Virus record (IMG/VR): IMGVR_UViG_3300042868_005134
Coordinates: 124,001 to 188,000 of that record
Length of the DNA stretch: 64,000 nt
Reading direction: 5' to 3' (one strand)
Within the stretch, counting starts at the first letter, position 1, and each line of letters starts with the position of its first letter. This document shows positions 11,009 to 52,818 of this stretch, piece after piece. The translations under genes and the position numbers were made by a program. The notes beneath the pieces are model-generated. The model made no database searches. It was not told the origin of the DNA and saw only the letters and a program-made list of their open reading frames with translations.

Positions 11009-11023
11009 GTGTTATCTCTCTTG

Positions 11024-11030
11024 TATTTAT
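11024..11030 (-). promoter_or_regulatory. Late promoter (ATAAATA) overlapping upstream stop codon
   Basis: AATAAATA spans the TAA of the 11030-12247 gene. Confidence 0.6.
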
Positions 11031-12984: not shown

Positions 12985-12998
12985 AATCTATAGTTTGT

Positions 12999-18205: not shown

Positions 18206-18247
18206 TATTCTATACTCCATTTGTTTAAAGGGCATGTTCTAAACTTA

Positions 18248-18254
18248 TATTTAA
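18248..18254 (-). promoter_or_regulatory. Possible late promoter (TTAAATA)
   Basis: TAAATA core in the 48-bp intergenic gap; AT-rich context lowers confidence. Confidence 0.4.
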
Positions 18255-18283
18255 TCATATAATGATCCTACTATATGCTACAC

Positions 18284-19510: not shown

Positions 19511-20214
19511 TATGTTCCGTATCGTTTTCTATGTGATGTTTGGTATTGTTGAATAACTTGTGAAGCTGAGTGTGCGGCGTTGTAAACCTGCATGGCTCCA
19601 AAATCTCCTAGCCAATGTCCCCAGCCCCAAAAAATTCCAATACTGCCCATGTTGCCGCCACCAAGTGAACGAGGCGAAACTACATTCAATACATAATCTT
19701 GTACACCATTTATGTACATGACCATATTGGTACCACTGGTTCTAACAAACGCAAGATGTACCCAGGCGCCTGTATTGGCCGATGCTCCAGTGCTGGTATA
19801 ATAATTCCATTGACTGTCGTACTGAACGTAATATAGTTTTCCGTCATTTAATCCGTAACCTACATTAACAGGGCCGCCGCTCCAGTGTGAAAATAATGCT
19901 CGCTGACCAGTGGCTGTTGTGCGTACAGAAAAATATACAGTGCAGACAGTTGGTAATGTAAAATCGGTGTGAGCAATATAGTCATTCGATCCGTCAAATG
20001 ATAGATATTTGATATTGTTAACATTGTCGAATGTGGGGCCGTTAAGCAGCGTTCCTACCCTAGTACCTTGCAAATCATTTAGTGTGGTTCCTGAGTATGA
20101 CAGTGTTCTGTTGAGATCTACTGCAAAATCTAAATTTGCAGATATGAGACCGGCTCGTGAATTTTCCTTTGACGAATTTATCAAAGAGTCAGCAACTCCG
20201 TAGGTGGTTGACAT
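19510..20214 (-). CDS. LamG domain protein
   Basis: 'SFDGSNDYI', 'WVHLAFVR', 'MQVYNAAHSASQVIQQY'. Confidence 0.75.
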   Translation of the reverse strand: MSTTYGVADSLINSSKENSRAGLISANLDFAVDLNRTLSYSGTTLNDLQGTRVGTLLNGPTFDNVNNIKYLSFDGSNDYIAHTDFTLPTVCTVYFSVRTTATGQRALFSHWSGGPVNVGYGLNDGKLYYVQYDSQWNYYTSTGASANTGAWVHLAFVRTSGTNMVMYINGVQDYVLNVVSPRSLGGGNMGSIGIFWGWGHWLGDFGAMQVYNAAHSASQVIQQYQTSHRKRYGT

Positions 20215-25625: not shown

Positions 25626-25632
25626 TATTTAT
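25626..25632 (-). promoter_or_regulatory. Late promoter (ATAAATA) overlapping upstream stop codon
   Basis: AATAAATA spans the TAA at 25634-25632; SD GGAGAG lies downstream. Confidence 0.6.
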
Positions 25633-28600
25633 TAGATAGTGTTTAACGTTCTCACTACCCTCACTTTGATTGTATTACCTGCTGTCGATTGGGCAGAAAG
25701 TTCTAAATTAGCACCGTTCACAGCGGCTGTAAACACTACTAAACTATTGCCAGTTTTAACTACACCGTAGTCTGTCATTTGTGCTGTTGTGCCGTTATGA
25801 ATTGTTAAAATTTCACTAACTTGATAGTTGCCACTGTCAGTACCTGCTGTACAAGTTACTTGTAAAATGTACTTGGCACTGCGGTATGTAGCTATTGGAA
25901 ATGTACTTACTACTGTAGGAGCGCTAGCGACAATGCTAGCTGTTTCGCTTGAACTTTCGTATGCTTGACCGTTTAATGATAGTGTTCCTATAGCAAGTGT
26001 ACTTGTTGTGCTACCAATATTAATTGTGCCGGTAGTTACACCGGTATAGATATTGACTGTGCCAGTAGTCACATCACTGGTCAAGTTAACTGTGCCTGCT
26101 GTAGTGCTTTTAATTTTAACAATATTACCAGTTACAGCACCGCCAAATGTTAGTGTACTTGCTCCACCCGTAGCATTTGTAGCAATATTGATGGCTGTGG
26201 CACTAGATGATGAGTTGGCTAGTGCCAGTGTGGTTGCCGAGCCAGCAAAGTTAACTGTGCCAACAATCTGATTAAACACATTAGCAGTGGACATTGAAGT
26301 TTCTAAATCTAATTGATTCGAAACCCCCGACTGGTCAATACGCATACGCTCAGTCATCACTTGTTGCTCGTCTCCCGAACTTCCCTGTGACGGTGTCTTA
26401 AACTTTATTGAGCCGCCCGCCATACTGTTGCCAGTGTTGGCGCCACTTTGAATAATAATGTTGGCGCCGGCTATGTTTGTACCTACTGCGTTTTCGCCTT
26501 TTAACGTTGAAGTTACTGGTGCAACACTGGCTTCGCTTGAGCCTAGCGTTATGTTTCTATTTCTCAAAACAATAGTACTTTCTCTTACTATTGTACCAAC
26601 ACGAGCCAAGTTAGATTGTGTAGTAGCTGTAGTAATTTTAAAACTAAATGTAGTACTTGTTGCGCTGGCCGACGTTACAGGCCATGTGCCGTTGATGTTA
26701 GTATCGCCTGAACTAGCGACAGTAACTTGATCTCCTGTTCTAATACCTAAACTTGTGTTAGTGTCAGTGAACGCTATTGGGGTTGTTACTGTGATAATTC
26801 CTGTTACTGCTGAACTCAAGTACACACGGGCAGCGTCAACACCTGATACTGTTGTACCTGCTGGAATAAATGCGTTACCTTGTACAAGCATACCTGTTCG
26901 TACACCCGCAGCAATTGGACTAGATCCAAACATTAAGAATGTGTCTGCATTAGTTGATGCTGTGCCTAAACTCATGCCAGTTGCGCCAATGAACACACTG
27001 CCTGTTCCTGCTGTTGACACCACAGTAGCACCAGTATTTGCGTAGGTAAATGTAGTCAAACTGGTTACTGTAACAACGGCGTTAACAGTATTAAATCCAG
27101 CGTCACCGCAAACAATAGTCACTGTATCAGTTGAGATTAATCCGTGATTGGTAGTTGTGGCAATTGTTGCCACGTTTGAGCCGTTTCGTGCTACTGTGCT
27201 GATAACACCTGTTAGTCCAACGTTGGCTGTTACAGTTACTATAGCACTGCCGCCGGTTGTGTAACTCTTAACATTGGTTGTAAATGCTTCACTGGCTGTA
27301 TTTGATCCAATAACTACACTGCTTGCAGCACTGCCAATAGATACTGCTTTGGTGTTGGCGTCAAATACAAATGCTTGTGCTGTACTACTGGTTGTAATTG
27401 CAGCACCTGTAGCATCATATGATTTAGCAATTGTTAAACCTGGACTCCACTGTGGCGCGGTGCCACTACTAGTCATTACGGTATTAGCAACACCAATATT
27501 TAATTTGTTTAGTGTAGCAGATGCACTAGCATATAGTGTATCACCTTGTGTATACGTTACTAAACCAGTTCCTCCCACGCTAACTGGTTGAGTTGTGTGA
27601 TTGGCAGAATCTAGTACGTAAGCTAAATTTTTAGTTTGTAATGTTCCAGCATCAATAACATTGTCTTTTATCAACACTTGACCTTCACCTAAACTAGATC
27701 CAAGTCCTACACTAAATTGTACAGTGTTAAAACTAGCTACGCCTGGGCTTGTATAGTTGCCCACAGCACCAGTACTGTTTACTTTAGTAACATCAAATGT
27801 TAGTGCGCCGTAGTACGGGCTTGATCCGCTGCCTGTTAATGTTAAAGCACTGCTAGCTGCAAGAGCTGCACTTTGTACCACAGTTGACCAAATACTATCA
27901 CCTCGCAAAAACGTACTGCTACTAGCTGAACCAGTGGCTAATCGTGATGTTGCAATAATACCAGATACAATATTACTAGCATCAATTGTGGTAGCAACTA
28001 AACTATTCCAGTTGCCCCGTGTTTGACTACTTGTATTCACTACTCCAGTAATTTTAATGCTATTCTTAATAAATGTTATAGTTCCTGAACCTGTAGCAGT
28101 TAAATCAACAGCACCGATAGTTACACCAGCAGTACTATCTAACGCATCGCTTCGCAATTCATGAATACTAAAACTATTTGTAGTTATGCTGCCAACAAAG
28201 AAGTGCCTTCCTGAAGTAATTTGTACACTACTCTGCTCTGGTAAACTTGATCCTATTATCTGAAAAGCGTCGCCTGTAGTAAATCCATGAGCAGGTACAG
28301 TAATAGTATTGTTAACAATATCTACCGTCTTACGTGTAAATGTATGGCCGGTGCCTGTACTAGAACTTAGTACTTGAATTGTTCCCAATGAATAGTTATT
28401 ATACAATTCAATTGTGCTTGTGGTAATAACTTTAGCATAATAAACGTTACCAGATATTAGGCCACCTACTGCTGGGTCTGTACCGGGACTGTATATTACA
28501 GGGTCGCCGTTAGTGAATCCGTGGAGTGCCAGTGTGGTAATTCTATTTAATACAGTGTCAACGCCGCCGCCACTGCCTGTTGAAGCAGCATTGAATGTTG

Positions 28601-31600
28601 CCGTTACGGTTGTAGTGGCAGTGACAGTTAGTTGTGTTGCGGCATTATCTTCAACAAAGTCAGGCGCACCGTTAGTAGCAACAAAGGTCTCGCCGCCAAA
28701 TAAGTTTGTATAAATGCGTTTTTCAATAGCATTAACTAATATTTGAAAGCCTGATCCAGTGCCGTTACCAAATCCGCCTGCTACCGATACAGCAGATAGA
28801 GCATTACCTACAGCATAATTTGCTCCGCCAAATACAATGTCAACACCTGTTACTGCTCCAGCGGCCACTGTGATGTCTGCCAGGGCGCCAACACCAGTGC
28901 CTGAAACGTTGGTTAATGGAACACTGTAATATACTCCGTTGGTATATAATGTTCCGCCTGTTAGACCTGACAAATTGTTAACACTGGTAATTATGCCAGC
29001 ACGTAGTTCAATAAATTCCGCCTGTGCTTGATTATCAGCTGCAGTTAATACTGTACGTATTGAGCCTGTTTCTACAGCGGGAGTAAAGAATTTTAAAGTA
29101 GCTGTAGTTGTACTTGCCACTGTACTAGTTGCTGGAAACGTAACTGTAAAAGTTCGTGGGTTAACTCCCATATTGACTACAGTAATCTTTGAACCTAATG
29201 GTATAGTTCCAGCTGTATCAAATACAAAGTCGCCTACCGTGATGGTTCCGGTTAAGCTGGCTGATGCCACACTACCAGTCATTGTTAATGCACTAGATGC
29301 GCCTGCTAGTGTGGCTGTTGCTGTGGTGCTAGCACTAGTTGAGCTGTCGGCAGCAGTATTTGTGTAATAAAATTCAGTAGTACTTGTTACGGTAATAGTC
29401 GCAGTTGCTGAAAAACTTGAAGTTGTTGCACTAATTTTAACTTCATTGTTTGTTATAAAATTATGAACTAGTGCGCTTGTGATGTAAGCATTGTTGTTAT
29501 ATCTAAATGCCGCACTGATAGTTCCATTAGTAAATATTGGACTTGCTGTATTTTCAGTGATTAAATATTGTCCAGTTGTTGAAATACGTAGAAAATAGTT
29601 ATTAGTTGATGAAGCAGCGGCTGTTACCGCACTTGGATTTACTGCTGTGTTAGTAGTACTAGGAGTTCTATCAGTGCCTATAATCAATGTATTGGCCGAA
29701 GCGGTAAATGGTGTGTTGAAGTTTGCTCCAACGCTGCCCACAATAATTGCACTGGCAGCAGTGTAGTCTGCTTTGGTAATACCACTAGCACCACCGTAAT
29801 AAATTGTACCTTGTACTGTGGCAGTGCCAGGATTAATATTTGTGAATACTGTGAATGTACCTGCGGCTGCTCTATTAATTTTCCAAACACCGTTATAGGC
29901 AGCAGGAGTAACACCTTCAATTAACACATAAGTATTTGCTGTCAATGTGACAGCTCCGCTGTGTGTCACAGTAAATGTGTTGATGCCCGATGTAATTGCA
30001 GTGGTGGCTGTATTAGCTGTAGTTTGTATAACAACAGATCCAATAGGAGCTGTAACAACTCCGCCTGTCAATGTTAATTCTTGTTGATAGAAATTTTCTG
30101 TAGCAATGTCACCTGATAATATGTCGCTTGCTGGAATGTTGTCAACTTGTATCAAACGGCTGTCGATACCATTTGAACTCCAACTGGTAAAACTACGGCT
30201 AGTTGGAATCAAATCGCTATTAATTTGTCCGTTACTGTTTAGTTGTACCAGCGAACCTGGGATTGCGTTAGTGCTTACGCTCTTATCTAATACATTACCC
30301 AAGTGAGTTTGAAAATATGTATAGGTTGCTAGTTGTGTACTGAGCCTAGAGTGTTTTGGTCCACCAGGTTCATCATTGCCAAGCTCAGGATCAACACTAA
30401 TACTTTCAACAGTTACGCCGCCAACTCCGAGACGCAACACATCTAGTGTGTCAACTGTGATTTTGTTTGTGAATGTTACGTTACCAGTTCTGTTAAAGGC
30501 TGTAATAAAAGTGCCAACTTTAAAGTCGCCTAGTTCGTTAGTACCCGATGTATAAACTCGACCAGCAGCTTCACTTACCTGTTCGTATGCTGATACAGTT
30601 TTACCACCGTTTTGCGGTAACGCATTGTAATCTGTGCCGCTGCCTGCATATTCCCAAGTATGGCTTGAGCTGTTGGTAATACTGGGTCTATGGAACCAAA
30701 TTTCTTTACCCGGTAATGTTACAACATTGGTATATGATCCGCCAATTAGTGAAGGGGCAATTTCAAAATCAGCACCGTATAAATCTGTTCTAGCAGTTGC
30801 TGTACTCACGGTGTAGGTTACACTTACACCTGCAACTTGTGTAATTGAGCTTGCTGCTGTAAACACATTACGAGTTTCAGTAAGTCCAATAGTTACTTTA
30901 TTAATGTTTAACGTTAATGTTCGTGTTCCGCTGACATAACTGTAGACGTAGCCTTTGCTGGGGAATCCGCCAGTAGTACCTTCAACTAAGTCTCCTATAA
31001 CAAACGTGTAGCCGCTTGGGCTTCCTGCTGCTAGAACAAGGGTTTGAAATGTATTATGTGTGTCTGTAACAGCATTAACAAACATATCATAATCTTGTCT
31101 AATAAAATTTTGTGTGCCAACACCCGCAAAGGTAATGTCGACTAATTTTGTTAAACTATTATCGTAGTATAATTGAAACGTGTCATTTGTTAATTTCTTA
31201 ACATAAAAAATGTCGCCGTCAAATATATTTCCCAATTGTGTAGTGCCGTTAGACTCATAAGATATCTGATCTTGATTTAATAAACCGTGAGCTACTATGG
31301 TAAATGTATCAGTGCCTATATCGATAGCTGTGGCAGAATTAAAACTAACACTTAGATAATTTCCCAATGCTGTTTTATAACTATTTGTCAAGTTGGCATT
31401 TGTTGTTGGATCATAAATTTGAATAACAAACTCTTCAACAGGACCATTAATGCGAGTCCAACCGAACGCTGTAATTGTTTGTATACTACCGGTTGTTCCC
31501 GTAGTGCCAATGTATCCTTTGTCAAAGGCAAAAGCGTTAGGACTAAATCCGCTGGCACGTAAAGCATATAATCCAAAGTTAGTAGCTGAGTTGGTAATAG

Positions 31601-32810
31601 AACAGTAGCCGCCAGACTGCGTGTACGTTCCGTTCAACATGAAAATCTGGAAACATGATACTAATTGTACATAAGCATCGTTAATAACTCGCCAGCCGGT
31701 GCCTCCAAAGCTCAACATGGTAAAGGCGTTGGCCACCATAGATTTACCTTGTTCAGGTGCTGCTCCGCTTATTGGATTTTCTGATTCAATCTGATTAGTT
31801 GGTGTGTTGGGTGTAACCACTAAACTACCGTCAACTAGTACACCACTGGCTCCTAAAAATGATAATAGTGTACAGTTTTGAATATATGGTGACTGACTAA
31901 TTATAGGTTTAGTGCTTGGTAGGTAAGTGTAACCTACTCGACTGGTTGTAGTATCCAGTGGATTATCAAATGACACAGCATACGCAAATGAGTAGGCAGG
32001 AATACCAGAGCTTAATCCATCTTTAAAAGTTACTTCACCAAAATAGCAACCGTTGCGCACACGTAACAAATCTCTGTTAGCATTCAACGGACGAATGCTA
32101 ACTGAACGTAAGCTATCGCCTTTAACTGTTACGTTGTCTGGAACAATAATAGGATTATTTTCAACATAGTCGCCTGCTGATACTATAACGTTAATTCTAA
32201 CACCATTAACAGCACTGCCTGATGTATAAACTAAGCCCGATGCTATTTGTAATCCTCGTTTAATTGTCAATACAGGTGCGCTTATACCGTCATTGAGGTC
32301 ATTACCTTTAGTGGCACTAACGTAAACTCGGTTACTGCCGAATGTATCTGAATCTATCCAGCCTAGTTGTCCACTGCCATCTGTCTTTAATATTTGATTT
32401 AGTAGTCCTGTAGCAGTTGGCAATGTAAGAGTGTAAGACGATGCTAAATTATCTGCGGCCTTTATACCTGTGTAGTTTACACCGTTGACCGTTAATTCTT
32501 TTAATTGTAATGTACTAGCATTGTCAAGACTAGTATTTTGTGTTAAACTAATCTGAGTACTAGTTGCTGTAAGTACTGTTGTGCCATCAGCTACGGCTGT
32601 AACAGTACCGTCAGTGCCTGTATCACTTACTGTTACGTTTGTATTTTTTTTGTATATGCTTGCTGTAACGTCGACCACTGTGCCGGCGTCATTCTTCATA
32701 TAAATCTTAGCGTCTGCTGTGTTTAGACCTAATTCGCCTGCTGATAAATCACCCGCTAAAGGTACTTTGTCAGCCACGCTGCTGCGTTTGTGTATAATCT
32801 TTGTTGCCAT
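25632..32810 (-). CDS. Very large fibre / tail structural protein (2392 aa) with beta-helix-like domain
   Basis: N-terminal 'KRSSVADKVP...L.AGELGLNTAD.KIY' fibre-attachment motif; 'YVSATKGND.NDG...GDY.ENNPI.VP..V.V.GDSLRSVSIRP' (pectin-lyase-like); several 'HG(F/L)xxGD' repeats. Confidence 0.75.
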   Translation of the reverse strand: MATKIIHKRSSVADKVPLAGDLSAGELGLNTADAKIYMKNDAGTVVDVTASIYKKNTNVTVSDTGTDGTVTAVADGTTVLTATSTQISLTQNTSLDNASTLQLKELTVNGVNYTGIKAADNLASSYTLTLPTATGLLNQILKTDGSGQLGWIDSDTFGSNRVYVSATKGNDLNDGISAPVLTIKRGLQIASGLVYTSGSAVNGVRINVIVSAGDYVENNPIIVPDNVTVKGDSLRSVSIRPLNANRDLLRVRNGCYFGEVTFKDGLSSGIPAYSFAYAVSFDNPLDTTTSRVGYTYLPSTKPIISQSPYIQNCTLLSFLGASGVLVDGSLVVTPNTPTNQIESENPISGAAPEQGKSMVANAFTMLSFGGTGWRVINDAYVQLVSCFQIFMLNGTYTQSGGYCSITNSATNFGLYALRASGFSPNAFAFDKGYIGTTGTTGSIQTITAFGWTRINGPVEEFVIQIYDPTTNANLTNSYKTALGNYLSVSFNSATAIDIGTDTFTIVAHGLLNQDQISYESNGTTQLGNIFDGDIFYVKKLTNDTFQLYYDNSLTKLVDITFAGVGTQNFIRQDYDMFVNAVTDTHNTFQTLVLAAGSPSGYTFVIGDLVEGTTGGFPSKGYVYSYVSGTRTLTLNINKVTIGLTETRNVFTAASSITQVAGVSVTYTVSTATARTDLYGADFEIAPSLIGGSYTNVVTLPGKEIWFHRPSITNSSSHTWEYAGSGTDYNALPQNGGKTVSAYEQVSEAAGRVYTSGTNELGDFKVGTFITAFNRTGNVTFTNKITVDTLDVLRLGVGGVTVESISVDPELGNDEPGGPKHSRLSTQLATYTYFQTHLGNVLDKSVSTNAIPGSLVQLNSNGQINSDLIPTSRSFTSWSSNGIDSRLIQVDNIPASDILSGDIATENFYQQELTLTGGVVTAPIGSVVIQTTANTATTAITSGINTFTVTHSGAVTLTANTYVLIEGVTPAAYNGVWKINRAAAGTFTVFTNINPGTATVQGTIYYGGASGITKADYTAASAIIVGSVGANFNTPFTASANTLIIGTDRTPSTTNTAVNPSAVTAAASSTNNYFLRISTTGQYLITENTASPIFTNGTISAAFRYNNNAYITSALVHNFITNNEVKISATTSSFSATATITVTSTTEFYYTNTAADSSTSASTTATATLAGASSALTMTGSVASASLTGTITVGDFVFDTAGTIPLGSKITVVNMGVNPRTFTVTFPATSTVASTTTATLKFFTPAVETGSIRTVLTAADNQAQAEFIELRAGIITSVNNLSGLTGGTLYTNGVYYSVPLTNVSGTGVGALADITVAAGAVTGVDIVFGGANYAVGNALSAVSVAGGFGNGTGSGFQILVNAIEKRIYTNLFGGETFVATNGAPDFVEDNAATQLTVTATTTVTATFNAASTGSGGGVDTVLNRITTLALHGFTNGDPVIYSPGTDPAVGGLISGNVYYAKVITTSTIELYNNYSLGTIQVLSSSTGTGHTFTRKTVDIVNNTITVPAHGFTTGDAFQIIGSSLPEQSSVQITSGRHFFVGSITTNSFSIHELRSDALDSTAGVTIGAVDLTATGSGTITFIKNSIKITGVVNTSSQTRGNWNSLVATTIDASNIVSGIIATSRLATGSASSSTFLRGDSIWSTVVQSAALAASSALTLTGSGSSPYYGALTFDVTKVNSTGAVGNYTSPGVASFNTVQFSVGLGSSLGEGQVLIKDNVIDAGTLQTKNLAYVLDSANHTTQPVSVGGTGLVTYTQGDTLYASASATLNKLNIGVANTVMTSSGTAPQWSPGLTIAKSYDATGAAITTSSTAQAFVFDANTKAVSIGSAASSVVIGSNTASEAFTTNVKSYTTGGSAIVTVTANVGLTGVISTVARNGSNVATIATTTNHGLISTDTVTIVCGDAGFNTVNAVVTVTSLTTFTYANTGATVVSTAGTGSVFIGATGMSLGTASTNADTFLMFGSSPIAAGVRTGMLVQGNAFIPAGTTVSGVDAARVYLSSAVTGIITVTTPIAFTDTNTSLGIRTGDQVTVASSGDTNINGTWPVTSASATSTTFSFKITTATTQSNLARVGTIVRESTIVLRNRNITLGSSEASVAPVTSTLKGENAVGTNIAGANIIIQSGANTGNSMAGGSIKFKTPSQGSSGDEQQVMTERMRIDQSGVSNQLDLETSMSTANVFNQIVGTVNFAGSATTLALANSSSSATAINIATNATGGASTLTFGGAVTGNIVKIKSTTAGTVNLTSDVTTGTVNIYTGVTTGTINIGSTTSTLAIGTLSLNGQAYESSSETASIVASAPTVVSTFPIATYRSAKYILQVTCTAGTDSGNYQVSEILTIHNGTTAQMTDYGVVKTGNSLVVFTAAVNGANLELSAQSTAGNTIKVRVVRTLNTI

Positions 32811-32831
32811 TCTGCTATTCCTAAAAAGGTT

Positions 32832-32883
32832 GGGTCAGGTCTTTCGACGCCCTGCGGGTCAGGTCTAGTTTCCTAGACGCCCT
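32832..32883 (-). ncRNA. Tandem structured RNA motif in the intergenic leader of the 2392-aa gene (candidate cis-regulatory element)
   Basis: Two units of AGGG-C-GUC(UAG)-GAAA-(CUA)GAC-CUGA-CCC at 32883-32856 and 32853-32832. Confidence 0.55.
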
Positions 32884-35800
32884 TTAATAACTACCACCAT
32901 CTATCGTATCTGTCCATACTGGAACGTTACTCACGTCCGTTGTTAAAATTCCATAACTTGTTGTCGCGTTACTTCCTGGAACACTTGCGGCTGTTACTGC
33001 TAGTCCGCTAGCATTCTGTCCGTAAATTACACCGTTGGTTGTAAAACTACTTTGTCCTGTTCCACCATACTGTACTGCTAAATCAGTTGTTAATGTTAGT
33101 ACACCAATATTTACCGTGCTGGTTGCACTGCCTAGATTGATTGTGCTTGCGCCAGCGCCTGCTACGTTTAATGTACCAGTAGTAATGTTATTGAATAAGT
33201 TAACTGATCCAGTTGTAACATCGCTGTTCAATGTAACAGCGCCTGCTGCTGTTCCGGCAATCTTTAAACTGTTACCAGTAAATGCTCCGCCAACTACTGC
33301 ACCAGTAGTAGCTGTAGTACTGTTACCTAAATTAATAGTACCGCTATTAGCAATATTAACTGTGCCAGTTACACTTTGCCAAGCATTAACTGTGCCGCTG
33401 GTAACATCGGTTGTTAAATTAATTGTACCTGCTGCAGTCGAACCAATTTTAAATATGTTACCAGTAATAGCTGGACCAATTGTTATTGTACTCAATGCCG
33501 CTGCACTTGTTCCAATATTAACCGTTGTCGACACACCGAATAGATTGCCTGTTAAAATATTTGTGTTGAAAACACTAGCTGTGCCAGTATTTGAACTTAC
33601 AATACTTGGATTGGTGCCGTTCATATTAAATGTTGCGGCATTAGTACCTGTAATCGTTTGATTGCCAATGGTCAATGTGCCAGTAGCAGCGCCCATGGCA
33701 ATAGTTGTGGCTGCGCCAGCAAAATTAACAGTAGTGGCAGTACTATTTAAAATATTAAATGTAGTGGCAGATGTGGTTAGGTCGCCACCGTCAATGTTGG
33801 CGTCACCGTCTACATCAAGATTGCTAATTACAGTTAAGTTATCTCCAACTGTCAAATTCTTAGCAATGCCAACACCGCCTGTAAATTGTGCTGAACCCGA
33901 AGCCGCTGTACCTAATGTGTTGTCGGTTGTGTTCTTAACTAATAGTTTTGGTGTTGCTTCAATTGTAACACTTTCGCTTGTATTAGTTGTTACAGCCGTG
34001 ATATATGTTTGTGTGTTTTCTTTAATTTGAAAAGCAACGGCTGTATTGTCTGGAACGTCCACTGTTGTACTGCCACTAATAGTGTGTGTATCAGCTGTCC
34101 TATCGTCACCTAATGTTGTATTTCCTGCAACGTTTAAGTTTTGTCCAACAAACAAACTTTTAGCAATACCCACGCCACCTGCAAAAGTTGTGCTAGCAAC
34201 ACTAATACTAGACGAGTCTACAGTATTTAAGAATTCATATTTAGGTATAGTTCCAAACGTTATTAATTCTATACTATTACTAGTATTAATCTTAATATAA
34301 TTATTGGTATTTTCTTTTATAGTGAAGATATCAGCAACATTATCTTTTAAATCTACAGTTAATTTGCCATTGATAGTGTTTACACTATCAGTATTAAGCC
34401 CTAATCTAGAATTGATATCAACTTCAAAATTATTGAGAACAGATGTTGTACCAGTATTAGATCCAAATTTGATTATTGTTGCTGCACCGAATGCGTTAAT
34501 AGTAGTGGCCGATGTATTAGCAAGATTAAATGTTGCTGAACTTACCGTTAGGTCGCCGCCATCGATGTTGATATCCCCGTCCACATCAAGGTTGTGATTG
34601 ATGTTAGTAGTTCCGGTTGACGACCCAATTTCAATAACGGTTGCCGAGCTAGCAAAATTAACAGTTGTAACGGTATCATTTATCAAATTAAAAGTAGTTT
34701 GATTAGTGGTTAAATCTCCTCCTTTAATTTGTAAATCACCATCTAATACTACGTTATCATTTTTAATTGTTACTGTGCCAGCGGCGCCTGCTGCTCCAAT
34801 AGCTATGGTAGTTGCTGCACCGAATGTGTTAACAGTTGTAACGGTATCATTTATCAAATTAAAAGTAGTTTGATTAGTGGTTAAATCTCCTCCTTTAACT
34901 TGTAAATCACCGTCTAATACTACATTATCATTTTTGATTGTTATTGTGCCACTGGCACCGGCCGCTCCAATAGCTATGGTAGTTGCTGCACCAAATAGAT
35001 TGCCTGTTAAAATATTTGTGTTGAAAACACTAGCTGTGCCAGTTGAACTAGTAACAATACTTGGACTTACTCCGTTCATGTTGAATGAAGTAGCGTTGGT
35101 CCCTGTAATGGTTGTATTGCCAATGGTCAATGTGCCAGTAGCAGCACCTATACCGATAGTTGTGGCCGCACCGGCAAAATTAACAGTAGTGGCGGTACTA
35201 TTTAAAATATTAAATGTAGTAGCAGTCGTGGTTAGGTCGCCGCCGTTTACTTCGACGTCTAATGAAAATGTTACTGGTCCTACAATAGTTTGAGCAGCAC
35301 TCTGTACTTTGTTTAGATAATTGTTTTGAACATAGACCGCAACAGCATGTTGAGTTGGCGCTGTGTTGACATCTTGTAAACCGTTACTGGCCAATAAACT
35401 TGTATTATCACTAACTTCTCTAAGTTGTACACCAACTGGAATACCATTACGTTTAAATGGACCAATTGCTGCCAATCCTTGTAGGTTAATGTTTTCTGCA
35501 TCAATTGTTACTTCACCAGTGATAGCGTTAACACTGAAGAATTCACCAATGCGATAATTTCCAATTTGGTCGCTGGTTACAGTAAAACATTTTCCGTTGT
35601 TGATTTCAATACGTTCGTTCGATGGAACAGGTTCACCGCCAAAGAACGGTAACGCATTATAAGTAACGCCAGCGCCTACGTATTCCATAGCTGTACTAGC
35701 TGTGGACACAGTGGATACGTTATGGAATCTTACATCCGTCAAGGCCAGCGCATTCTGAATAGGAGGAAACATAGTTACTTCCACTGAGCCGCCGTATGCA

Positions 35801-38292
35801 TCATTTAAAAAGTCAATAACACTTTCTTGAATAGTTGAAATTGTCGGGAATACAGTATTTGAAATACCGTACATTGTAGCATCACCGTAGCTGTAATTAG
35901 GCAATACTATAAGTTCGGGAACATAGCCAGTTCCATGATCTACAACATTTATAATATATTCTAGTAAATCTTCAGCTGTACTTGCTGGTCCATTAGGGTC
36001 TACGGGAGATCCTACAGATCCAAAACTTTGTGGCGTAGTGTTTCCTACACTAGGAGTTACAGTTTGATTTTTGACAATCCTACCAATTATAGTCTGCCAG
36101 TACTCGTATGCTGCCTGCGTTTCTTCAATTTGACCGGCAATGACGCTACCTTCAGCATAAGCCAGTGCAGCATTTCTAGTTTGTCCATTGCCTTCATAGG
36201 TTAAATCATATGCTATAGCGTCAATAATATATTCTATATCCCGTTTACAAGTGGCAACATCATAGGTGAATACTGGAAAATTAACGGTAATCCATGCTTC
36301 AATTTCATCTTTAATAAAGTTTTTGTTAGCTACTAATAGTGTAGCAGCTTCAGTAAATCCTGGCAATCGTGTGGCAGTAAATGGAATATTGATACTAGGT
36401 GCTGCCGAAGCACCAAGATTAATAATGTTAACAATGGTGTTGAACAAACTAGTAACTCTCGACGTTGCAGTTGCGTTGGCAACCACGCTGGCATTTGCTA
36501 GTACATCTGTTTTTGCTTGTTGTATACCAGCAATAGTTTGTGCTTTTTGTAAGCTAGTTACTTTGCTAGAATAGCTTCTTAAATATGATAGGCCTGCGTA
36601 AACACTTTGATGATTACTGTTAAAAACCATATCGCCTAATACTGCGCTGATGATATAACCCACGTCACGTCGACATTTTTGTTCGTCGTATCTAAAAGTA
36701 AATGTAGGAGAACCAGTTGCTGAAATATAATAAGCTGTAGGATCGTTTCCTAAAAACATTATGCTACCAATTTGAGGTTTATTAGAAATTTCATAAACAT
36801 CGATGGTTAAATTTTTAGCTAGATTTATAATAGCACCAGCTGTCACCGTGGGTGATCCGCCGCCACTAAATGATATGGTTGGCTGAAAGTCATAACCCGA
36901 GCCAGCATTATCTACTTGTATCGAAACTACTTTTTGTAAAATTGGATCAATAACTGCTGTGGCTGTGGCTGTAATGCCGCCTGGTGTTGTTGGTGACTGT
37001 ATAGTAACGCTAGGTGCCACAGTATAGCCAGCGCCTTCTTCGCTTATGGTGATAGAACCAACTGTTGAGTAATAATCGCTGTTTAATACTCCGGTAGCAT
37101 ACGGAGTAGGATAATAACCGTCAGCTACGAATGCTTTCTCTCCAAAGTCGCACACGCTGTTTGAAATACTTAGATAACCGCCTTTTGTGGTATAAAATGC
37201 TTTACTACAAAATACCGCAAAACAACTAACTAACTGCATGTAACCAAAATTAGTGATATGGAATCCTATGCCGCCTTGACTAACTTGGGTAAACGCATCG
37301 CCTACCATAGATTTGATTGGACTTTGACTATTATATTTGTCGCCGTCAATCAGCATACCACCACCACCGCCCTCAACATTAATACCATAGCTGTTTACTT
37401 GTGTTGGATCAATTTCGTTATCCAACAATGGTCGAGGGCCAGTAACCATAGTTCCGTTTGTGTCAGGTTGTTCTGTTTGGAATGGTAGCCATTCAACGCC
37501 ATTACGCATCCAGGGACCATTGATGTTACTACAGTTTTGTACATACGGGCTAGTGTCGACTATAGCATCGCTGTCTATGGCAAATGCATACGCAGGGGCC
37601 TGAAGACCTTTAATTACAAGTTGTGCTACGTAGTCAGCACTGTTGAGATGAAATAAATCAAAACCTTTTTTAACCGTGCCTGTGGCAGACGCACTGGCAA
37701 TATTTGTTCCAAAATCTCTGTACCTAAAAGTTGTTAAAGTTGGTGTGTCTATAACATTTGCTGCGGTATCATCGATACTGGGGAAAGTCGCACAGTCAAC
37801 TCTAACTCTATCTGCCGAAGTTAATCCGTGATTGGTCAGTGTAGTGACTGTGACATACCCGTCTGTTCTATCAACATTAGTAATTGTATAAGTTATTGGG
37901 CCGTTAAGTGGTCTAATAATTGTTGTGCGTAGTGTGTCGCCTACAATAGAAACTTTAGGAGGTACACGTATAGGATTGTCTTCTTCATATTCGCCGCTGC
38001 GTACATAGATAGTTGTACCTTGTTGTGCCACGGCACATGCGGCCTTCAGTGTTCGTTTAGCTTGATTAGGGCCTTCACCTAGGCCGTCGTTGGCGTCGTT
38101 ACCATCTAGGGTAACATACATCACATTTGAGACTGTGGGTCCTGGAATACCAAATCCTGCTCCAAAAACAAGATTACCGTTGATCAATACGTCACTGGTA
38201 GGATTAAACTCTATATTACCATCAGCTTTTTGAAGAATGGTATCGTCTAAAAAACTTTGGGGATTTACATTATGTCTGCGTAAATATTTCAT
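32884..38292 (-). CDS. Large fibre / tail structural protein (1802 aa) with beta-helix-like domain and 57-aa repeats
   Basis: Shares 'YV..DGND.NDG...SGEY.E.NPI.VP..VSIVGD.LR' and 'SPY.QNC' with the 2392-aa protein; 'DGDLQVKGGDLTT' repeats; ends 'IDGGSY'. Confidence 0.75.
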   Translation of the reverse strand: MKYLRRHNVNPQSFLDDTILQKADGNIEFNPTSDVLINGNLVFGAGFGIPGPTVSNVMYVTLDGNDANDGLGEGPNQAKRTLKAACAVAQQGTTIYVRSGEYEEDNPIRVPPKVSIVGDTLRTTIIRPLNGPITYTITNVDRTDGYVTVTTLTNHGLTSADRVRVDCATFPSIDDTAANVIDTPTLTTFRYRDFGTNIASASATGTVKKGFDLFHLNSADYVAQLVIKGLQAPAYAFAIDSDAIVDTSPYVQNCSNINGPWMRNGVEWLPFQTEQPDTNGTMVTGPRPLLDNEIDPTQVNSYGINVEGGGGGMLIDGDKYNSQSPIKSMVGDAFTQVSQGGIGFHITNFGYMQLVSCFAVFCSKAFYTTKGGYLSISNSVCDFGEKAFVADGYYPTPYATGVLNSDYYSTVGSITISEEGAGYTVAPSVTIQSPTTPGGITATATAVIDPILQKVVSIQVDNAGSGYDFQPTISFSGGGSPTVTAGAIINLAKNLTIDVYEISNKPQIGSIMFLGNDPTAYYISATGSPTFTFRYDEQKCRRDVGYIISAVLGDMVFNSNHQSVYAGLSYLRSYSSKVTSLQKAQTIAGIQQAKTDVLANASVVANATATSRVTSLFNTIVNIINLGASAAPSINIPFTATRLPGFTEAATLLVANKNFIKDEIEAWITVNFPVFTYDVATCKRDIEYIIDAIAYDLTYEGNGQTRNAALAYAEGSVIAGQIEETQAAYEYWQTIIGRIVKNQTVTPSVGNTTPQSFGSVGSPVDPNGPASTAEDLLEYIINVVDHGTGYVPELIVLPNYSYGDATMYGISNTVFPTISTIQESVIDFLNDAYGGSVEVTMFPPIQNALALTDVRFHNVSTVSTASTAMEYVGAGVTYNALPFFGGEPVPSNERIEINNGKCFTVTSDQIGNYRIGEFFSVNAITGEVTIDAENINLQGLAAIGPFKRNGIPVGVQLREVSDNTSLLASNGLQDVNTAPTQHAVAVYVQNNYLNKVQSAAQTIVGPVTFSLDVEVNGGDLTTTATTFNILNSTATTVNFAGAATTIGIGAATGTLTIGNTTITGTNATSFNMNGVSPSIVTSSTGTASVFNTNILTGNLFGAATTIAIGAAGASGTITIKNDNVVLDGDLQVKGGDLTTNQTTFNLINDTVTTVNTFGAATTIAIGAAGAAGTVTIKNDNVVLDGDLQIKGGDLTTNQTTFNLINDTVTTVNFASSATVIEIGSSTGTTNINHNLDVDGDINIDGGDLTVSSATFNLANTSATTINAFGAATIIKFGSNTGTTSVLNNFEVDINSRLGLNTDSVNTINGKLTVDLKDNVADIFTIKENTNNYIKINTSNSIELITFGTIPKYEFLNTVDSSSISVASTTFAGGVGIAKSLFVGQNLNVAGNTTLGDDRTADTHTISGSTTVDVPDNTAVAFQIKENTQTYITAVTTNTSESVTIEATPKLLVKNTTDNTLGTAASGSAQFTGGVGIAKNLTVGDNLTVISNLDVDGDANIDGGDLTTSATTFNILNSTATTVNFAGAATTIAMGAATGTLTIGNQTITGTNAATFNMNGTNPSIVSSNTGTASVFNTNILTGNLFGVSTTVNIGTSAAALSTITIGPAITGNIFKIGSTAAGTINLTTDVTSGTVNAWQSVTGTVNIANSGTINLGNSTTATTGAVVGGAFTGNSLKIAGTAAGAVTLNSDVTTGSVNLFNNITTGTLNVAGAGASTINLGSATSTVNIGVLTLTTDLAVQYGGTGQSSFTTNGVIYGQNASGLAVTAASVPGSNATTSYGILTTDVSNVPVWTDTIDGGSY
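34658..34898. repeat. 171-bp period tandem repeat with 70-bp identical core
   Basis: 34658-34727 is identical to 34829-34898; additionally 33539-33588 is identical to 34994-35043. Confidence 0.85.
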
Positions 38293-39891: not shown

Positions 39892-40584
39892 TTAAGCGTT
39901 AGGAATCTTAGCCACTGTGGCAGTAGCAGAACCTAATGTCCAAGCATGTGAAGTATTGTTAGCATACACTGTGCCAGTGCCTTGAGTCAGTCTGGCTCTG
40001 TGTGATGTCAGTTTGGTCACAAAATATGTGCCTGCTGCTGCATCTGTGGCCTGTATATCCATTTCACCTGCGGCTGATGCGGCTGATGCTTTTAATTTAC
40101 AAATCATAGTGCCGTCTGCTGTTCTAACTTTGTAGCGTGTGCCGGATACTTGTTTGATGATGTCTCCAACTTTGCGACTGCCGCCTGTGACAAAAGCAAA
40201 CACTGTGATGGCATTTTCTTGATTGGTTGCTGTACTTACTGCACCTGTGTCCACTTGAAACACGGCTGTGAGAGTGGTTGTGCCAATTGTACCTGTGCCT
40301 GCTGTTACTGTAGGAACTGATGTGTAACCCGAACCTGCTTCCACTATTGTGATGCTGACAATAGCACCTGCAGTGGCTACCACTGTGCCGGTAGCTTGAA
40401 CGCCGCCTGGTAGTTGTGGTTGCGTGAATGTAACTGCGCCGCCAGTGGTATAACCTGTAGAGTTGTTGACACCACCCACAGTAACACTGCCTACTCGACT
40501 GCCACCGATGCCATCATCAGTGGTTACGCTTGCGGAACCGATGTTTCGGTTACCAAAGAATTTTTTATGTAAAGGACGTCCCAT
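39892..40584 (-). CDS. Structural protein downstream of major capsid gene (possible head decoration / fibre)
   Basis: 230 aa, T/G/A-rich, with its own late promoter and SD AAGGAG. Confidence 0.55.
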   Translation of the reverse strand: MGRPLHKKFFGNRNIGSASVTTDDGIGGSRVGSVTVGGVNNSTGYTTGGAVTFTQPQLPGGVQATGTVVATAGAIVSITIVEAGSGYTSVPTVTAGTGTIGTTTLTAVFQVDTGAVSTATNQENAITVFAFVTGGSRKVGDIIKQVSGTRYKVRTADGTMICKLKASAASAAGEMDIQATDAAAGTYFVTKLTSHRARLTQGTGTVYANNTSHAWTLGSATATVAKIPNA

Positions 40585-40673
40585 TTTATTTTCTCCTTAA
40601 GAAATAACAGCGTTCTAGGCTGTACGCGGTTGGATTTCCGCATAAAACTCACACTATGTGAATCATTACTATG

Positions 40674-50384: not shown

Positions 50385-50611
50385 AACTGTTACCCTTGTC
50401 TAGATCTGACATCGAAGAGTTGGTTAACAGTTTAGAATTAGATACAAAACAAATAAAAGATGAAATCTTTCGCATAAGTTGGTACATGCGAGGCGGAGTA
50501 AGCAGTCAGGATCTAATGCACGTTTACGGCTACGAGGATAGGCAGATCATGAATGAGATTATAAAAGAAAATATTGAAATTACCAAAAATAGCCGTATGG
50601 CTATTATTTAA
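50372..50611 (+). CDS. Downstream ORF lacking a canonical start; predicted -1 frameshift extension of the gp26-like protein
   Basis: The -1 frame is open from 50351 to the stop at 50611, with no ATG or SD near its start; slippery heptamer T TTT TTC at 50372-50378. Confidence 0.65.
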   Translation, partial: FFRIKLLPLSRSDIEELVNSLELDTKQIKDEIFRISWYMRGGVSSQDLMHVYGYEDRQIMNEIIKENIEITKNSRMAII

Positions 50612-51926
50612 TTTCGTCGTAACCATAGACGCCGTATTTTTTCTTAGGGTCGTCCTGTATTTTTAAAGTAGGATCAGGAATGCCGGCAACACCAACCCTA
50701 GCTTTTATGTCATTAAGTTTGTCGTTGCCTACTAGACGATATCCATTTTCATCACTAATTTGTTGATTATTAATGTAAAGTTTCTTGCCAACCCATTGAA
50801 TATTCATACCATTTGTAGCTTGTCTTGCGCCATCGGCAGCATCACCAGTTGGTGGTTTTACTGCGGTCTTACCAGGTAGTGGACCATCTAGTAGTCCAGC
50901 TTCCTGTAATCCTTTTTCTAGTAAATCAATAGCGGCTGCTGTCAATGCCCCTGTTGGTTCAGTAATTGCTCTTACCAAAGAACTATTTAAAAATTCTTTA
51001 CCAGCACTGGTACGCATGAATATCAAGAAAGCTGGGGCCGCAGGCCCCATTTCAATTAATTTAGAAATACCTTTTGCCACGTTAGTAGGCAAGCTAACAA
51101 ACATACCTAAATATTTTGTTGTTGTAATGCTGGCGCCGCCCAGTGTAGCTGCACCTGTGGCAATACCTTTAAACATGCCTGACATTGCGCCAAAGAATTT
51201 GCTGGCCACTCCAGTATTTAAGGCAACACCAATGGCCAATTCTCCTAACAGTTTCTTTCTTAACTGTTGATACTTGTTATAGGCTTCTTGCTCTGACATT
51301 TTTCCAAAAGGAGAATCTTTGCCAGCTTTATAATCTTGGTAGTCTTCCTCTAACACGGACAAATCCACGTAGTATTCTCTTACAAATTCTAAACCCACAA
51401 CAGTTTTTATCACAGTCATGGCTACATCGGGTATAAATCCCATCCTTGCCTGGGCTGCTGCCTTCATGGAAGCATTGGCACCACGCATTTTTAAGTAGGC
51501 TTTAATTTTTTCAAACCCTACTTTACTGTCAGGGTCAAATTTTCTCAAGTTTATTTTTTCTGTTTTAGCTACTGTTTTTTCTAATTGGGCAAGACGCTCA
51601 GTAACTTTCTTTTTTAACCACTTGCCGCCTTTACTTTGCCATGACTTAGGAATAAGTTTAAGTATTCCTGCTTTACCCAGCTTGGCAAAGCCAGGTGTAA
51701 ACAATAGTACAGCATCTATGAATAGATCATTCCATTCGTCGTCAGTAATTGATTCAGGATCTTGGTTGTATTTGCCAATGAATTTGTATATTTCGTAGGC
51801 ACTCCAAGCACTCATGCCTACAGAGATTGCGGTAATTATTGTACCTATTCCAATACCTGCTATTACAAGAGGTACGGCTTCATTCAATGATTCAGTTCTT
51901 TCAGAGACTATTTGATGGACTTTCAT
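50604..51926 (-). CDS. Hypothetical protein with MKVHQIVSE...LNE leader and hydrophobic segments (putative internal head / ejection protein)
   Basis: 440 aa; late promoter 6 nt upstream; TM-like stretch AVPLVIAGIGIGTIITAISVGMSAW. Confidence 0.6.
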   Translation of the reverse strand: MKVHQIVSERTESLNEAVPLVIAGIGIGTIITAISVGMSAWSAYEIYKFIGKYNQDPESITDDEWNDLFIDAVLLFTPGFAKLGKAGILKLIPKSWQSKGGKWLKKKVTERLAQLEKTVAKTEKINLRKFDPDSKVGFEKIKAYLKMRGANASMKAAAQARMGFIPDVAMTVIKTVVGLEFVREYYVDLSVLEEDYQDYKAGKDSPFGKMSEQEAYNKYQQLRKKLLGELAIGVALNTGVASKFFGAMSGMFKGIATGAATLGGASITTTKYLGMFVSLPTNVAKGISKLIEMGPAAPAFLIFMRTSAGKEFLNSSLVRAITEPTGALTAAAIDLLEKGLQEAGLLDGPLPGKTAVKPPTGDAADGARQATNGMNIQWVGKKLYINNQQISDENGYRLVGNDKLNDIKARVGVAGIPDPTLKIQDDPKKKYGVYGYDEIK

Positions 51927-52373: not shown

Positions 52374-52811
52374 TTAACCGTTTAGTTGTTTGCCTTTGAT
52401 GTGTGAGCCGTGTACACGAACAGCGATTTGTCCGTTGTAGTAGTCATCTGATTCTAATACCCGCCTGGAGAATTGTTCTCTTGCCTCGATATAACTACAT
52501 TCAGCCTTTGATGTGCAGTAATAAATTATTTCTCTATGGAAATTTTCTCTGCCTTGTTGTTCTACGTCTTTGTTTAGTTGGTCGTTTGAGCCATAGTATT
52601 CACGCCAGTCAGAATCAATTTTGGATTTAATCCGCTTTTTCTTCTTGGTGCCGTTCTTGAGTTTTACTGTTTTATAAGTTGTTTTAGAAAATTTTGATAA
52701 TTTCTTGCCTATATATTTTCGACCAGTGATGTTATTAGTGATACAATAGACAAATCCAATACATACTTCAGGTAAGGTTTCGACTATTGTGTTTTGATAA
52801 TACCATGACAT
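52374..52811 (-). CDS. Stand-alone GIY-YIG endonuclease
   Basis: 'GFVYCITNNITGRKYIGKK', 'WREYYGS', 'FHREII', 'SYIEAREQF', 'YYNG'; ATG at 52811; single catalytic domain with no obvious C-terminal DNA-binding repeats. Confidence 0.85.
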   Translation of the reverse strand: MSWYYQNTIVETLPEVCIGFVYCITNNITGRKYIGKKLSKFSKTTYKTVKLKNGTKKKKRIKSKIDSDWREYYGSNDQLNKDVEQQGRENFHREIIYYCTSKAECSYIEAREQFSRRVLESDDYYNGQIAVRVHGSHIKGKQLNG

Positions 52812-52818
52812 CAACTAG

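What the first reader, a model, noticed from the sequence alone, without database searches (positions are those of the whole stretch)
32811..32883. Tandem GAAA-capped hairpins with an identical asymmetric internal loop ahead of the largest fibre gene
Seen (mRNA strand): UAA-AGGG-C-GUCUAG-GAAA-CUAGAC-CUGA-CCC-GC-AGGG-C-GUC-GAAA-GAC-CUGA-CCC-AACCUUUUU-AGGAAUAGCAGA-AUG. The two units fill almost the whole gap from the upstream stop to the SD. They keep the GGG/CCC stem, the C versus CUGA loop and the GNRA tetraloop, while the upper stem changes from 6 to 3 bp with pairing preserved, a within-genome sign of selection on structure. There is no U-tract directly after the stems and no TAAATA in this gap. 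Inference: a two-site protein-binding operator (the 1x4 loop is C-loop-like), an RNase processing or stability element, or a ligand-sensing motif controlling fibre stoichiometry. An alternative CCC-GCA-GGG pairing between units could act as a switch.
Basis: partly seen in the sequence, partly recalled or inferred. Interest (0 to 1): 0.65.

Follow-up and report, generated by a model that had tools for sequence, protein, structure and literature searches.

The report
Conserved hairpin array before tail-fibre gene
The two small hairpins are real and belong to an apparently undescribed RNA motif: one to three copies of a roughly 21-37-base hairpin with an unchanging internal loop sit just before the start of one long tail-fibre gene in many uncultured T4-like water phages, and probably tune how much fibre protein is made.

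Summary
On the minus strand, the 73-nt gap between a 1802-aa and a 2392-aa tail-fibre gene holds two tandem units of the form GGG-C-stem-GAAA-stem'-CUGA-CCC, then a 3-bp mini-hairpin overlapping the Shine-Dalgarno sequence.

This is not a local oddity. Homologous fibre genes in IMG/VR contigs carry one (63 loci), two (10) or three (5) such units at the same place; 8 loci carry none.

Across 44 distinct units:
- The 5' C and the 3' YUGA of the internal loop never change.
- The upper stem varies from 3 to 10 bp with many compensatory changes.
- The lower GGG/CCC helix becomes GAG/CUC in three units.
- Loops are free, often GNRA or UUCG.

The motif occurs once per phage genome, always in the leader of this gene and 16-24 nt before its AUG. 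It matches no Rfam family, and no description was found in the paper library searched. Cultured relatives and GC-rich relatives lack it.

Best reading, by inference only: a cis-acting mRNA-leader operator whose invariant loop is bound by a trans-acting factor to set fibre translation. Processing or stability, ligand sensing and pure spacing remain open. The proposed inter-unit CCC/GGG switch is not supported.

The parts
32884..38292 (-). Upstream tail-fibre gene (P0002, 1802 aa), ending ..WTDTIDGGSY-TAA. Its C-terminus is conserved in the gene that precedes the motif in relatives.
   Evidence: PHROG tail fibre families phrog_5342 and phrog_17885.
32856..32882 (-). Unit 1: GGG (32882-32880), C (32879), 6-bp upper stem GUCUAG/CUAGAC (32878-32873 / 32868-32863), GAAA loop (32872-32869), CUGA (32862-32859), CCC (32858-32856).
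   Evidence: In close relatives the upper stem is replaced by other complementary sequences (L124, L125, L126, L130).
32853..32855 (-). 3-nt linker GCA between the units. The linker is 3 nt in every multi-unit array seen.
32832..32852 (-). Unit 2: GGG (32852-32850), C (32849), 3-bp stem GUC/GAC (32848-32846 / 32841-32839), GAAA loop (32845-32842), CUGA (32838-32835), CCC (32834-32832).
   Evidence: The covariance model R1 scores it at 32.3 bits, E 1.4e-5, the only hit in the 383-kb genome.
32820..32829 (-). Mini-hairpin CCU-UUUU-AGG. Its 3' arm is the start of the Shine-Dalgarno AGGA (32822-32819).
   Evidence: The third pair changes U-A to A-U in L157 and L159, and L328 has UCC-GAAA-GGA. It is absent in some arrays (L329, L334).
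25632..32810 (-). Downstream tail-fibre gene (P0001, 2392 aa). Its N-terminus MATKIIHKRS.. defines the gene family that carries the motif.

Best explanation
The two hairpins are copies of a conserved cis-acting RNA module in the untranslated leader of one particular long tail-fibre mRNA of T4-like aquatic phages.

Each unit is a short hairpin. Its lower GGG/CCC helix and its asymmetric internal loop (5' C opposite 3' YUGA) are fixed in sequence. The upper stem and the loop are free.

One to three units, spaced by exactly 3 nt, end 16-24 nt before the AUG, directly next to the ribosome-binding site.

The most likely mechanism is a translational operator. A trans-acting factor would recognise the invariant loop of each unit and so set how often 30S subunits start on the fibre message. 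That factor could be a phage protein such as an unassembled fibre or assembly component, or a conserved host protein. This would match fibre output to that of the gene upstream.

Shown: the structure, its conservation, its single-locus position and its sense-strand polarity. Inferred: that it acts on translation and through a bound factor.
For: Structure and selection:
- In 30 distinct units from loci chosen by protein homology, the upper-helix pair 8-21 is UA 19, CG 4, GC 4, AU 3. There are 18 double-change cells against 4.7 in shuffles (0 of 500), and 95.5% of cells pair against at most 58% when the partner is slid.
- In 44 distinct units the 5' C is 44/44 and YUGA 44/44. Helix-1 pair 2 is GC 40, AU 3, GU 1, and the upper stem is 3-10 bp.
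- The fibre N-termini share only 34-43% identity with the window's between groups, so the RNA core is better conserved than the protein.

RNA sense strand: G-U pairs and both GNRA and UUCG loops lie on the mRNA strand.

Position: the motif is always directly 5' of the SD and AUG of this gene. This holds whether the gap has its own ATAAATA late-promoter box plus a 5' hairpin (one-unit loci) or no promoter (two- and three-unit loci).

Single locus: R1 finds it once in the 383-kb genome, and once each (at E < 1e-4) in related records G001, G002, G004 and G005, the strongest match lying at this fibre gene in each. G005 also gives a weak 14.8-bit match (E 0.26) elsewhere. Record G003 has no motif.

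Marginal stability: minimal units fold at only -4.3 to -4.8 kcal/mol. That fits a recognition site better than a nuclease barrier.

Precedent: T4 gp43, gp32 and RegA operators sit at or just 5' of the ribosome-binding site (PMC3014915).
Against: - No binding partner is identified.
- Own-genome searches for RegA (PF01818; its control search was silent, so uninformative) and a NusG paralogue (PF02357) found nothing.
- Predicted occlusion of the SD is only partial (mean unpaired probability 0.41).
- The mini-hairpin at the SD is missing in some arrays.
- The invariant loop could equally be a nuclease site, a ligand pocket or a ribosome contact.
- The only expression data are metatranscriptome contigs without ends or strand.
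Confidence: 0.4

Rival explanations
1. mRNA processing or stability element. An endoribonuclease recognises the invariant loop or the linkers, or the hairpins protect the newly made 5' end of the fibre message. This would uncouple the fibre message's lifetime from that of the upstream gene.
For: In promoter-less loci the array starts 0-11 nt after the upstream stop codon, in an A/U-rich context. One-unit loci instead have a long 5'-terminal hairpin right after the ATAAATA box, so extra units could replace that hairpin. T4-type phages are known for intercistronic UUCG hairpins and RNase E processing (own knowledge; review PMC3014915).
Against: Minimal units are weak (-4.3 to -4.8 kcal/mol), which is poor for a decay barrier. 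One-unit loci already have a protective 5' hairpin yet keep the unit. The constant feature is the distance to the ribosome-binding site, not to a stop codon or a transcript start.
Confidence: 0.2
2. Passive architectural spacer. The hairpins compact the gap so that ribosomes ending on the upstream fibre gene restart on the next one, or they insulate the ribosome-binding site from neighbouring sequence. No trans factor is involved.
For: GC-rich and some other relatives have no gap at all: the ATG overlaps or abuts the upstream stop, giving direct coupling. Arrays fill the gap almost completely, leaving only 2-4-nt linkers.
Against: A spacer does not need an invariant C/YUGA loop and GGG/CCC helix across deeply diverged phages. 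One-unit loci have a promoter, and sometimes a terminator, between the two genes, so coupling cannot be the shared function.
Confidence: 0.12
3. Tandem mini-aptamer (riboswitch-like). Each unit's internal loop binds a small molecule or ion, and copy number sharpens the response.
For: There is a small invariant pocket with free stems and loops, copy number varies, and the position is directly before the SD. This is reminiscent of guanidine-II tandem hairpins (own knowledge).
Against: The motif is found only before a structural fibre gene and once per genome. No Rfam riboswitch matches even at E 10. No expression platform is evident. Twenty-one nucleotides is very small for a selective pocket.
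Confidence: 0.08
4. An element acting on RNA polymerase (put-like or ops/LoaP-like processive antitermination), so that 5-10-kb fibre genes are transcribed to the end.
For: The downstream genes are very long (1514 to 3567 aa). Leader hairpins serve this role in HK022 put and LoaP systems (own knowledge).
Against: No NusG paralogue is present in the genome. Position is fixed relative to the ribosome-binding site, not to a promoter. Other equally long fibre genes of the same cluster lack the motif.
Confidence: 0.05
5. A DNA-level element: the target hairpin of a diversity-generating retroelement, a recombination or cassette boundary, or a hairpin promoter.
For: It lies at the 3' end of one fibre gene and the 5' end of the next, where fibre modules are exchanged. 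The GAAA-capped hairpin after a gene end recalls the hairpin downstream of the variable region of the Bordetella phage DGR (own knowledge).
Against: No reverse transcriptase is present in the genome. Loops in relatives are not GRNA. G-U pairs and RNA-specific tetraloops point to RNA. In one-unit loci a promoter separates the unit from the upstream gene.
Confidence: 0.03

Closest known systems
T4 autogenous and RegA translational operators (gene 43 hairpin, gene 32 leader pseudoknot, RegA sites)
   Same: They are phage-encoded, lie in the mRNA leader at or just 5' of the ribosome-binding site, and are short structured or sequence-specific sites bound by a protein to repress initiation (PMC3014915).
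   Different: Those operators control replication and early genes and are recognised through loop or single-strand sequence. Here the gene is a late fibre gene, the apical loop is free, the fixed part is an internal loop, and the site is repeated 1-3 times. No binding protein is known.
T4 gene 25 and gene 38 initiation-region hairpins
   Same: They are RNA hairpins in the initiation regions of late baseplate and fibre genes of T4-type phages that affect translation (PMC3014915).
   Different: Those hairpins lie between the SD and the AUG and work by shortening the spacing. The units here lie upstream of the SD and carry an invariant loop.
E. coli thrS operator / ThrRS (two hairpin domains bound by a dimer)
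   Same: Two similar hairpins 5' of the ribosome-binding site act as a two-site operator that competes with the 30S subunit (own knowledge).
   Different: The thrS domains mimic tRNA anticodon arms and recognition is in the apical loop. There is no such mimicry here and copy number varies.
Guanidine-II riboswitch (mini-ykkC)
   Same: Tandem very small hairpins with covarying stems lie just before an SD (own knowledge; the family is in Rfam).
   Different: Guanidine-II is defined by conserved ACGR tetraloops that kiss. Here the loops are free and the conserved part is an internal loop. There was no Rfam hit.
Intercistronic C(UUCG)G hairpins of T4
   Same: They are short stable-tetraloop hairpins between late genes of T4-type phages (own knowledge). 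One group of relatives has exactly C-UUCG-G at the apex.
   Different: Those are generic stability or termination hairpins without a conserved internal loop or fixed flanks.
C-loop RNA 3D motif
   Same: Both are asymmetric internal loops with one long strand.
   Different: It could not be tested. Thermodynamic folding prefers the C paired to the G of YUGA, which gives a 1-nt A bulge and a 2-nt YU bulge.

Membership tests
Any Rfam 15 family | Covariance-model score at or above the family's gathering threshold | tested here: not met
   No hit overlaps 32811-32883 at gathering thresholds. At E up to 10 only three chance-level matches appear. Five relatives' loci give nothing relevant at E up to 1.
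Guanidine-II riboswitch | Two hairpins, each capped by a conserved ACGR tetraloop | tested here: not met
   Loops are GAAA, GCAA, GUAA, UUCG, UUAG, AUAU and others, and none is ACGR.
Intrinsic (Rho-independent) terminator | A GC-rich hairpin followed directly by a U tract | tested here: not met
   No terminator-like site was called in the gap. The U5 run starts 4 nt after unit 2 and is replaced by AUAU, AAAU and similar in relatives.
DGR target-recognition hairpin | A reverse transcriptase and template repeat in the genome, with the hairpin just after a variable region | tested here: not met
   No RVT_1 match in the 383-kb genome, while the control genomes gave matches. In one-unit loci a promoter lies between the upstream gene and the unit.
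T4-type late promoter | A TATAAATA or NATAAATA box | tested here: not met
   No TAAATA lies in 32811-32883. In one-unit relatives the box is a separate invariant element upstream of the unit.
Structured cis-regulatory mRNA leader element (generic kind) | A conserved secondary structure supported by compensatory changes, on the sense strand, at a fixed position before a homologous gene | tested here: met
Protein-binding translational operator | Specific binding of a repressor or activator that changes initiation | not testable with these tools
   No partner is identified. Position and sequence invariance are consistent with it but are not proof.
RNase III processing site (T7 R1.1 type) | An irregular duplex of about two helical turns with an internal loop | tested here: not met
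   Most units have only 6-7 bp in total (3 + 3-4).
Kink-turn | A 3-nt bulge followed by tandem sheared G-A pairs | tested here: not met
   The 5' strand offers only one unpaired C and has no GA after it, so tandem G-A pairs cannot form (sequence).
C-loop 3D motif | Specific non-Watson-Crick triples between long-strand bases and the flanking pairs | not testable with these tools
   This needs a 3D structure or chemical probing.

The most novel reading that the evidence does not exclude
The unit is a new, modular RNA recognition module and would be the first dedicated post-transcriptional control element described for a phage tail-fibre gene. A roughly 20-nt hairpin with an invariant C/YUGA loop is read by a still unknown phage or host factor, or binds a small ligand or the ribosome directly. 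It is dosed by copy number (1-3) to set fibre stoichiometry in a large clade of uncultured T4-like aquatic phages.
Probability: 0.3. Interest if true: 0.7.

Novelty: new variant of a known kind. Interest (0 to 1): 0.55.

Why it matters
Tail fibres decide host range, and their long multi-subunit assembly needs balanced synthesis. Yet no dedicated RNA control element for a fibre gene has been described, as far as the searches here show.

This motif is small, sharply defined and supported by covariation. It is repeated in a dose-like manner and is widespread in uncultured freshwater and marine T4-like phages, including a 383-kb jumbo genome. That makes it a tractable handle for asking how late structural gene expression is tuned in phages that cannot yet be grown.

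If a specific binder exists, the 21-nt unit would also be a compact RNA tag.

Tried and rejected
- **Rfam:** searched at gathering and at permissive thresholds on the window and on relatives. Nothing relevant.
- **Other copies in the genome:** exact pattern, loose script and covariance model all found none.
- **DGR hairpin:** no reverse transcriptase.
- **RegA and NusG paralogues:** not found. The RegA control search was silent, so that result is uninformative.
- **Cultured phages:**
  - blastn of a one-unit leader found no match.
  - The nearest cultured carriers of the N-terminal domain (Kyanoviridae: S-CAM7, Marine virus AG-345-F15) lack the motif.
  - Klebsiella and Escherichia T4-like fibres share only the protein domain.
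- **Bacterial genomes and MAGs carrying the domain:** no motif.
- **Inter-unit CCC-GCA-GGG switch:** 7 kcal/mol worse than the two-hairpin fold.
- **SD occlusion by folding:** only partial, so not decisive.
- **Metatranscriptome run X1:** held as contigs only. They cover the region but give no ends, strand or level.
- **Neighbouring small proteins:** no RNA-binding domain. They carry Laminin_G_3 domains or match no Pfam family.
- **Literature:** three targeted searches found no prior description. A fourth, on the two Rfam motif names, returned nothing relevant.

Full report
**1. What is in the window**

The window is bases 124001-188000 of a 383,411-bp IMG/VR virus record (40.7% G+C, CheckV 100% complete).

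The region is a minus-strand cluster of T4-type morphogenesis genes. It includes a major head protein (phrog_138) and a prohead protease (PF03420). It also has a run of very long fibre genes of 1101, 1624, 1794, 2392 and 1802 aa.

The finding lies in the 73-nt gap between the 1802-aa gene (32884..38292, P0002) and the 2392-aa gene (25632..32810, P0001). Both match PHROG tail-fibre families.

- the stop codon, then an A;
- unit 1, with a 6-bp upper stem;
- GCA;
- unit 2, with a 3-bp upper stem;
- AA;
- a CCU-UUUU-AGG mini-hairpin whose 3' arm starts the AGGA Shine-Dalgarno sequence;
- 8 nt, then the AUG.

Both units share GGG, an unpaired C, a GAAA loop, CUGA and CCC.

The exact pattern occurs nowhere else in the window (0 of 100 shuffles give any match) or in the genome. 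The gap has no TAAATA box, whereas neighbouring gaps have TAATAAATA overlapping the previous stop codon. P0001 is therefore most likely read through from an upstream promoter.

**2. It is a family, not a local repeat**

*How the family was collected.*
- A pattern scan of IMG/VR gave many chance hits inside GC-rich coding DNA. It also gave about 19 loci in which a short-looped version sits just before a gene starting MAT(T/K)I.HKRS, the same N-terminus as P0001.
- To avoid selecting on the motif, I then collected loci by protein homology to the N-terminal 110 aa (alignment A1; loci L123-L202). I did the same for a second subgroup (L328-L407).

*Copy number.* Of 86 loci examined, 63 have one unit, 10 have two, 5 have three and 8 have none.

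*Synteny.* The preceding gene ends ..W(T/S)D.IDGG.(F/Y) like P0002.

*Variation across 44 distinct units.*
- The unpaired 5' C is invariant.
- The 3' strand of the loop is CUGA (28) or UUGA (16).
- The lower helix is GGG/CCC in 40 units, GAG/CUC in 3 (the first unit of three-unit arrays) and has one G-U.
- The upper stem is 3-10 bp and changes freely while staying paired. Pair 2 is UA 24, AU 8, CG 5, GC 5, GU 1. Pair 3 is CG 34, UA 7, AU 2.
- Loops include GAAA, GCAA, GUAA, AAAA, UUCG, UUAG, UUUG, AUAU and longer ones.

*Covariation statistics.*
- On the MAFFT alignment of the first 30 units, 95.5% of cells pair. There are 18 double-change cells against 4.7 in shuffles (0 of 500), and pairing collapses when partners are slid by one column.
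- A second count on 35 whole leaders gives the same picture: 99.8% paired and 14 double changes against 1.2.
- These counts are per sequence, not per evolutionary event. But the changes occur in several separate subgroups.
- The fibre N-termini of those subgroups share only 34-43% identity with the window's protein. The invariant RNA core is thus more conserved than the adjacent protein.

*Polarity.* G-U pairs, and the use of both GNRA and UUCG tetraloops on the same strand, show that the element works as RNA of mRNA polarity.

**3. Two architectures**

*One-unit loci (the majority).* The order is:
- the stop codon of the upstream gene;
- sometimes a canonical terminator;
- an invariant ATAAATA box of the T4/cyanophage late-promoter type;
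- a few nucleotides later, a different hairpin with a conserved CGAU-UUCU-AUCG apex and a covarying lower stem;
- the unit;
- a 2-4-nt linker ending in A;
- CCU-NNNN-AGG overlapping AGGAGG;
- the AUG.

*Two- and three-unit loci.* This group includes the window. There is no promoter box, and the array starts 0-11 nt after the stop codon and fills the gap. Units are always 3 nt apart.

*What is constant.* The last unit ends 16-24 nt before the AUG in every case.

*The SD mini-hairpin.* It covaries (U-A to A-U in L157 and L159; UCC-GAAA-GGA in L328) but is missing in some arrays (L329, L334). It is therefore an accessory.

*Loci without the motif.* Relatives with no gap (ATG overlapping or abutting the stop), GC-rich relatives, bacterial-MAG contigs and the nearest cultured Kyanoviridae carriers of the N-terminal domain all lack it.

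**4. One locus per genome**

- The covariance model R1 finds one site in the 383-kb genome.
- It finds one strong match each in related records G001, G002, G004 and G005, in each record at this fibre gene. G005 also gives a weak 14.8-bit match (E 0.26) elsewhere. Record G003, whose fibre gene overlaps the upstream stop, has no match.
- It hits all 50 non-redundant motif loci and none of 8 control loci in 178 kb.

This is not a regulon-wide operator or a generic intergenic hairpin. It belongs to this one gene.

**5. What it is not**

- It matches no Rfam 15 family, in the window or in relatives.
- It is not a terminator (there is no U tract in relatives).
- It is not a late promoter.
- It is not a DGR hairpin, because the genome has no reverse transcriptase.
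- It is too short for RNase III.
- It cannot form a kink-turn.
It is also impossible in one-unit loci.

**6. How it most likely works**

*Shown.* This is a sense-strand RNA structure under strong selection. It has a sequence-invariant lower helix and internal loop, a free apex and variable copy number. It keeps a fixed place at the 5' edge of the ribosome-binding site of one late fibre gene.

*Inferred.*
- The only constant neighbour is the ribosome-binding site. Promoters, terminators and the 5' hairpin come and go. The function therefore concerns initiation on this message.
- The minimal unit is thermodynamically weak (about -4.5 kcal/mol), yet its loop sequence never changes. It therefore looks like a recognition site rather than a barrier.

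The best fit is a translational operator read by a trans-acting factor, with copy number setting the strength. T4 offers precedents for leader operators (gp43, gp32, RegA) and for initiation-region hairpins in late genes 25 and 38 (PMC3014915).

I put this at about 0.4. The rivals and their tests are in the report sections: processing or stability (0.2), passive compaction or coupling (0.12), mini-aptamer (0.08), action on RNA polymerase (0.05) and a DNA-level element (0.03).

*Limits.*
- Folding alone predicts only partial SD occlusion.
- The one public metatranscriptome that holds the region is kept as contigs. They show that RNA-library contigs span the AUG and both units, including one from a relative with a changed unit 2. 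They say nothing about ends, strand or level.

**7. Novelty**

Three targeted literature searches found no description, and Rfam has no such family. The kind of element, a structured leader element, is known. The specific module is new: an invariant C/YUGA loop, one to three tandem copies at 3-nt spacing, tied to a fibre gene.

Noticed in passing
window 40582-40663 (-): A full-length freshwater-2 RNA (RF02980, 74.3 bits). It lies in the leader of the 230-aa structural gene 39892..40584, just after a terminator and a CTAAATA late-promoter-like box downstream of the major head gene. That places this Rfam 'cis-reg' motif in a late phage 5' UTR.
   Followed up: partly
window 52230-52373 (-): A full-length Polynucleobacter-1 RNA (RF01718, 80.7 bits). 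It abuts the end of ORF 52374..52814 and lies upstream of ORF 50604..51926, so this motif is phage-borne here.
   Followed up: no
L141:1424-1450 and the same place in about 35 one-unit loci (alignment A3 columns 10-40): A second conserved hairpin starts a few nucleotides after the ATAAATA box. Its apex is CGAU-UUCU-AUCG and its lower stem is long and covarying (for example GCAAU/AUUGC, GUGAU/AUCAC). It is probably the 5'-terminal hairpin of the late transcript, and it is absent from the window.
   Followed up: partly
L176:1440-1460 and L178 (MASKIKH.. subgroup): Just before the single unit lies UUUUGACCACC, which looks like the 3' half (UUGACC) of a lost upstream unit. This suggests units are gained and lost.
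   Followed up: no
window 32838 and 32840 (metatranscriptome contig spanning 32784-32877): An RNA-library contig from a related strain carries C-to-U in CUGA and A-to-U in the 3' arm of unit 2, as in relative L124. The partner position 32847 lay too near the contig end to be listed.
   Followed up: partly
L132, L193, L195, L363-L391, L410, L414: Relatives of the fibre gene without the motif have the ATG overlapping or within a few bases of the upstream stop. That would couple translation of the two fibre genes directly.
   Followed up: partly
window 10403-20214 (-): Between the giant fibre genes there are two repeated pairs of small genes with Laminin_G_3 (concanavalin-like lectin) domains: 234+408 aa and 246+405 aa. 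They may be fibre tips or adhesins.
   Followed up: no
L408:1436-1503 (Marine virus AG-345-F15): A cultured-clade relative has GAATAAATA followed by a 5' hairpin before its fibre gene, but no C/YUGA unit. The promoter-plus-5'-hairpin layout is therefore older than the unit.
   Followed up: no
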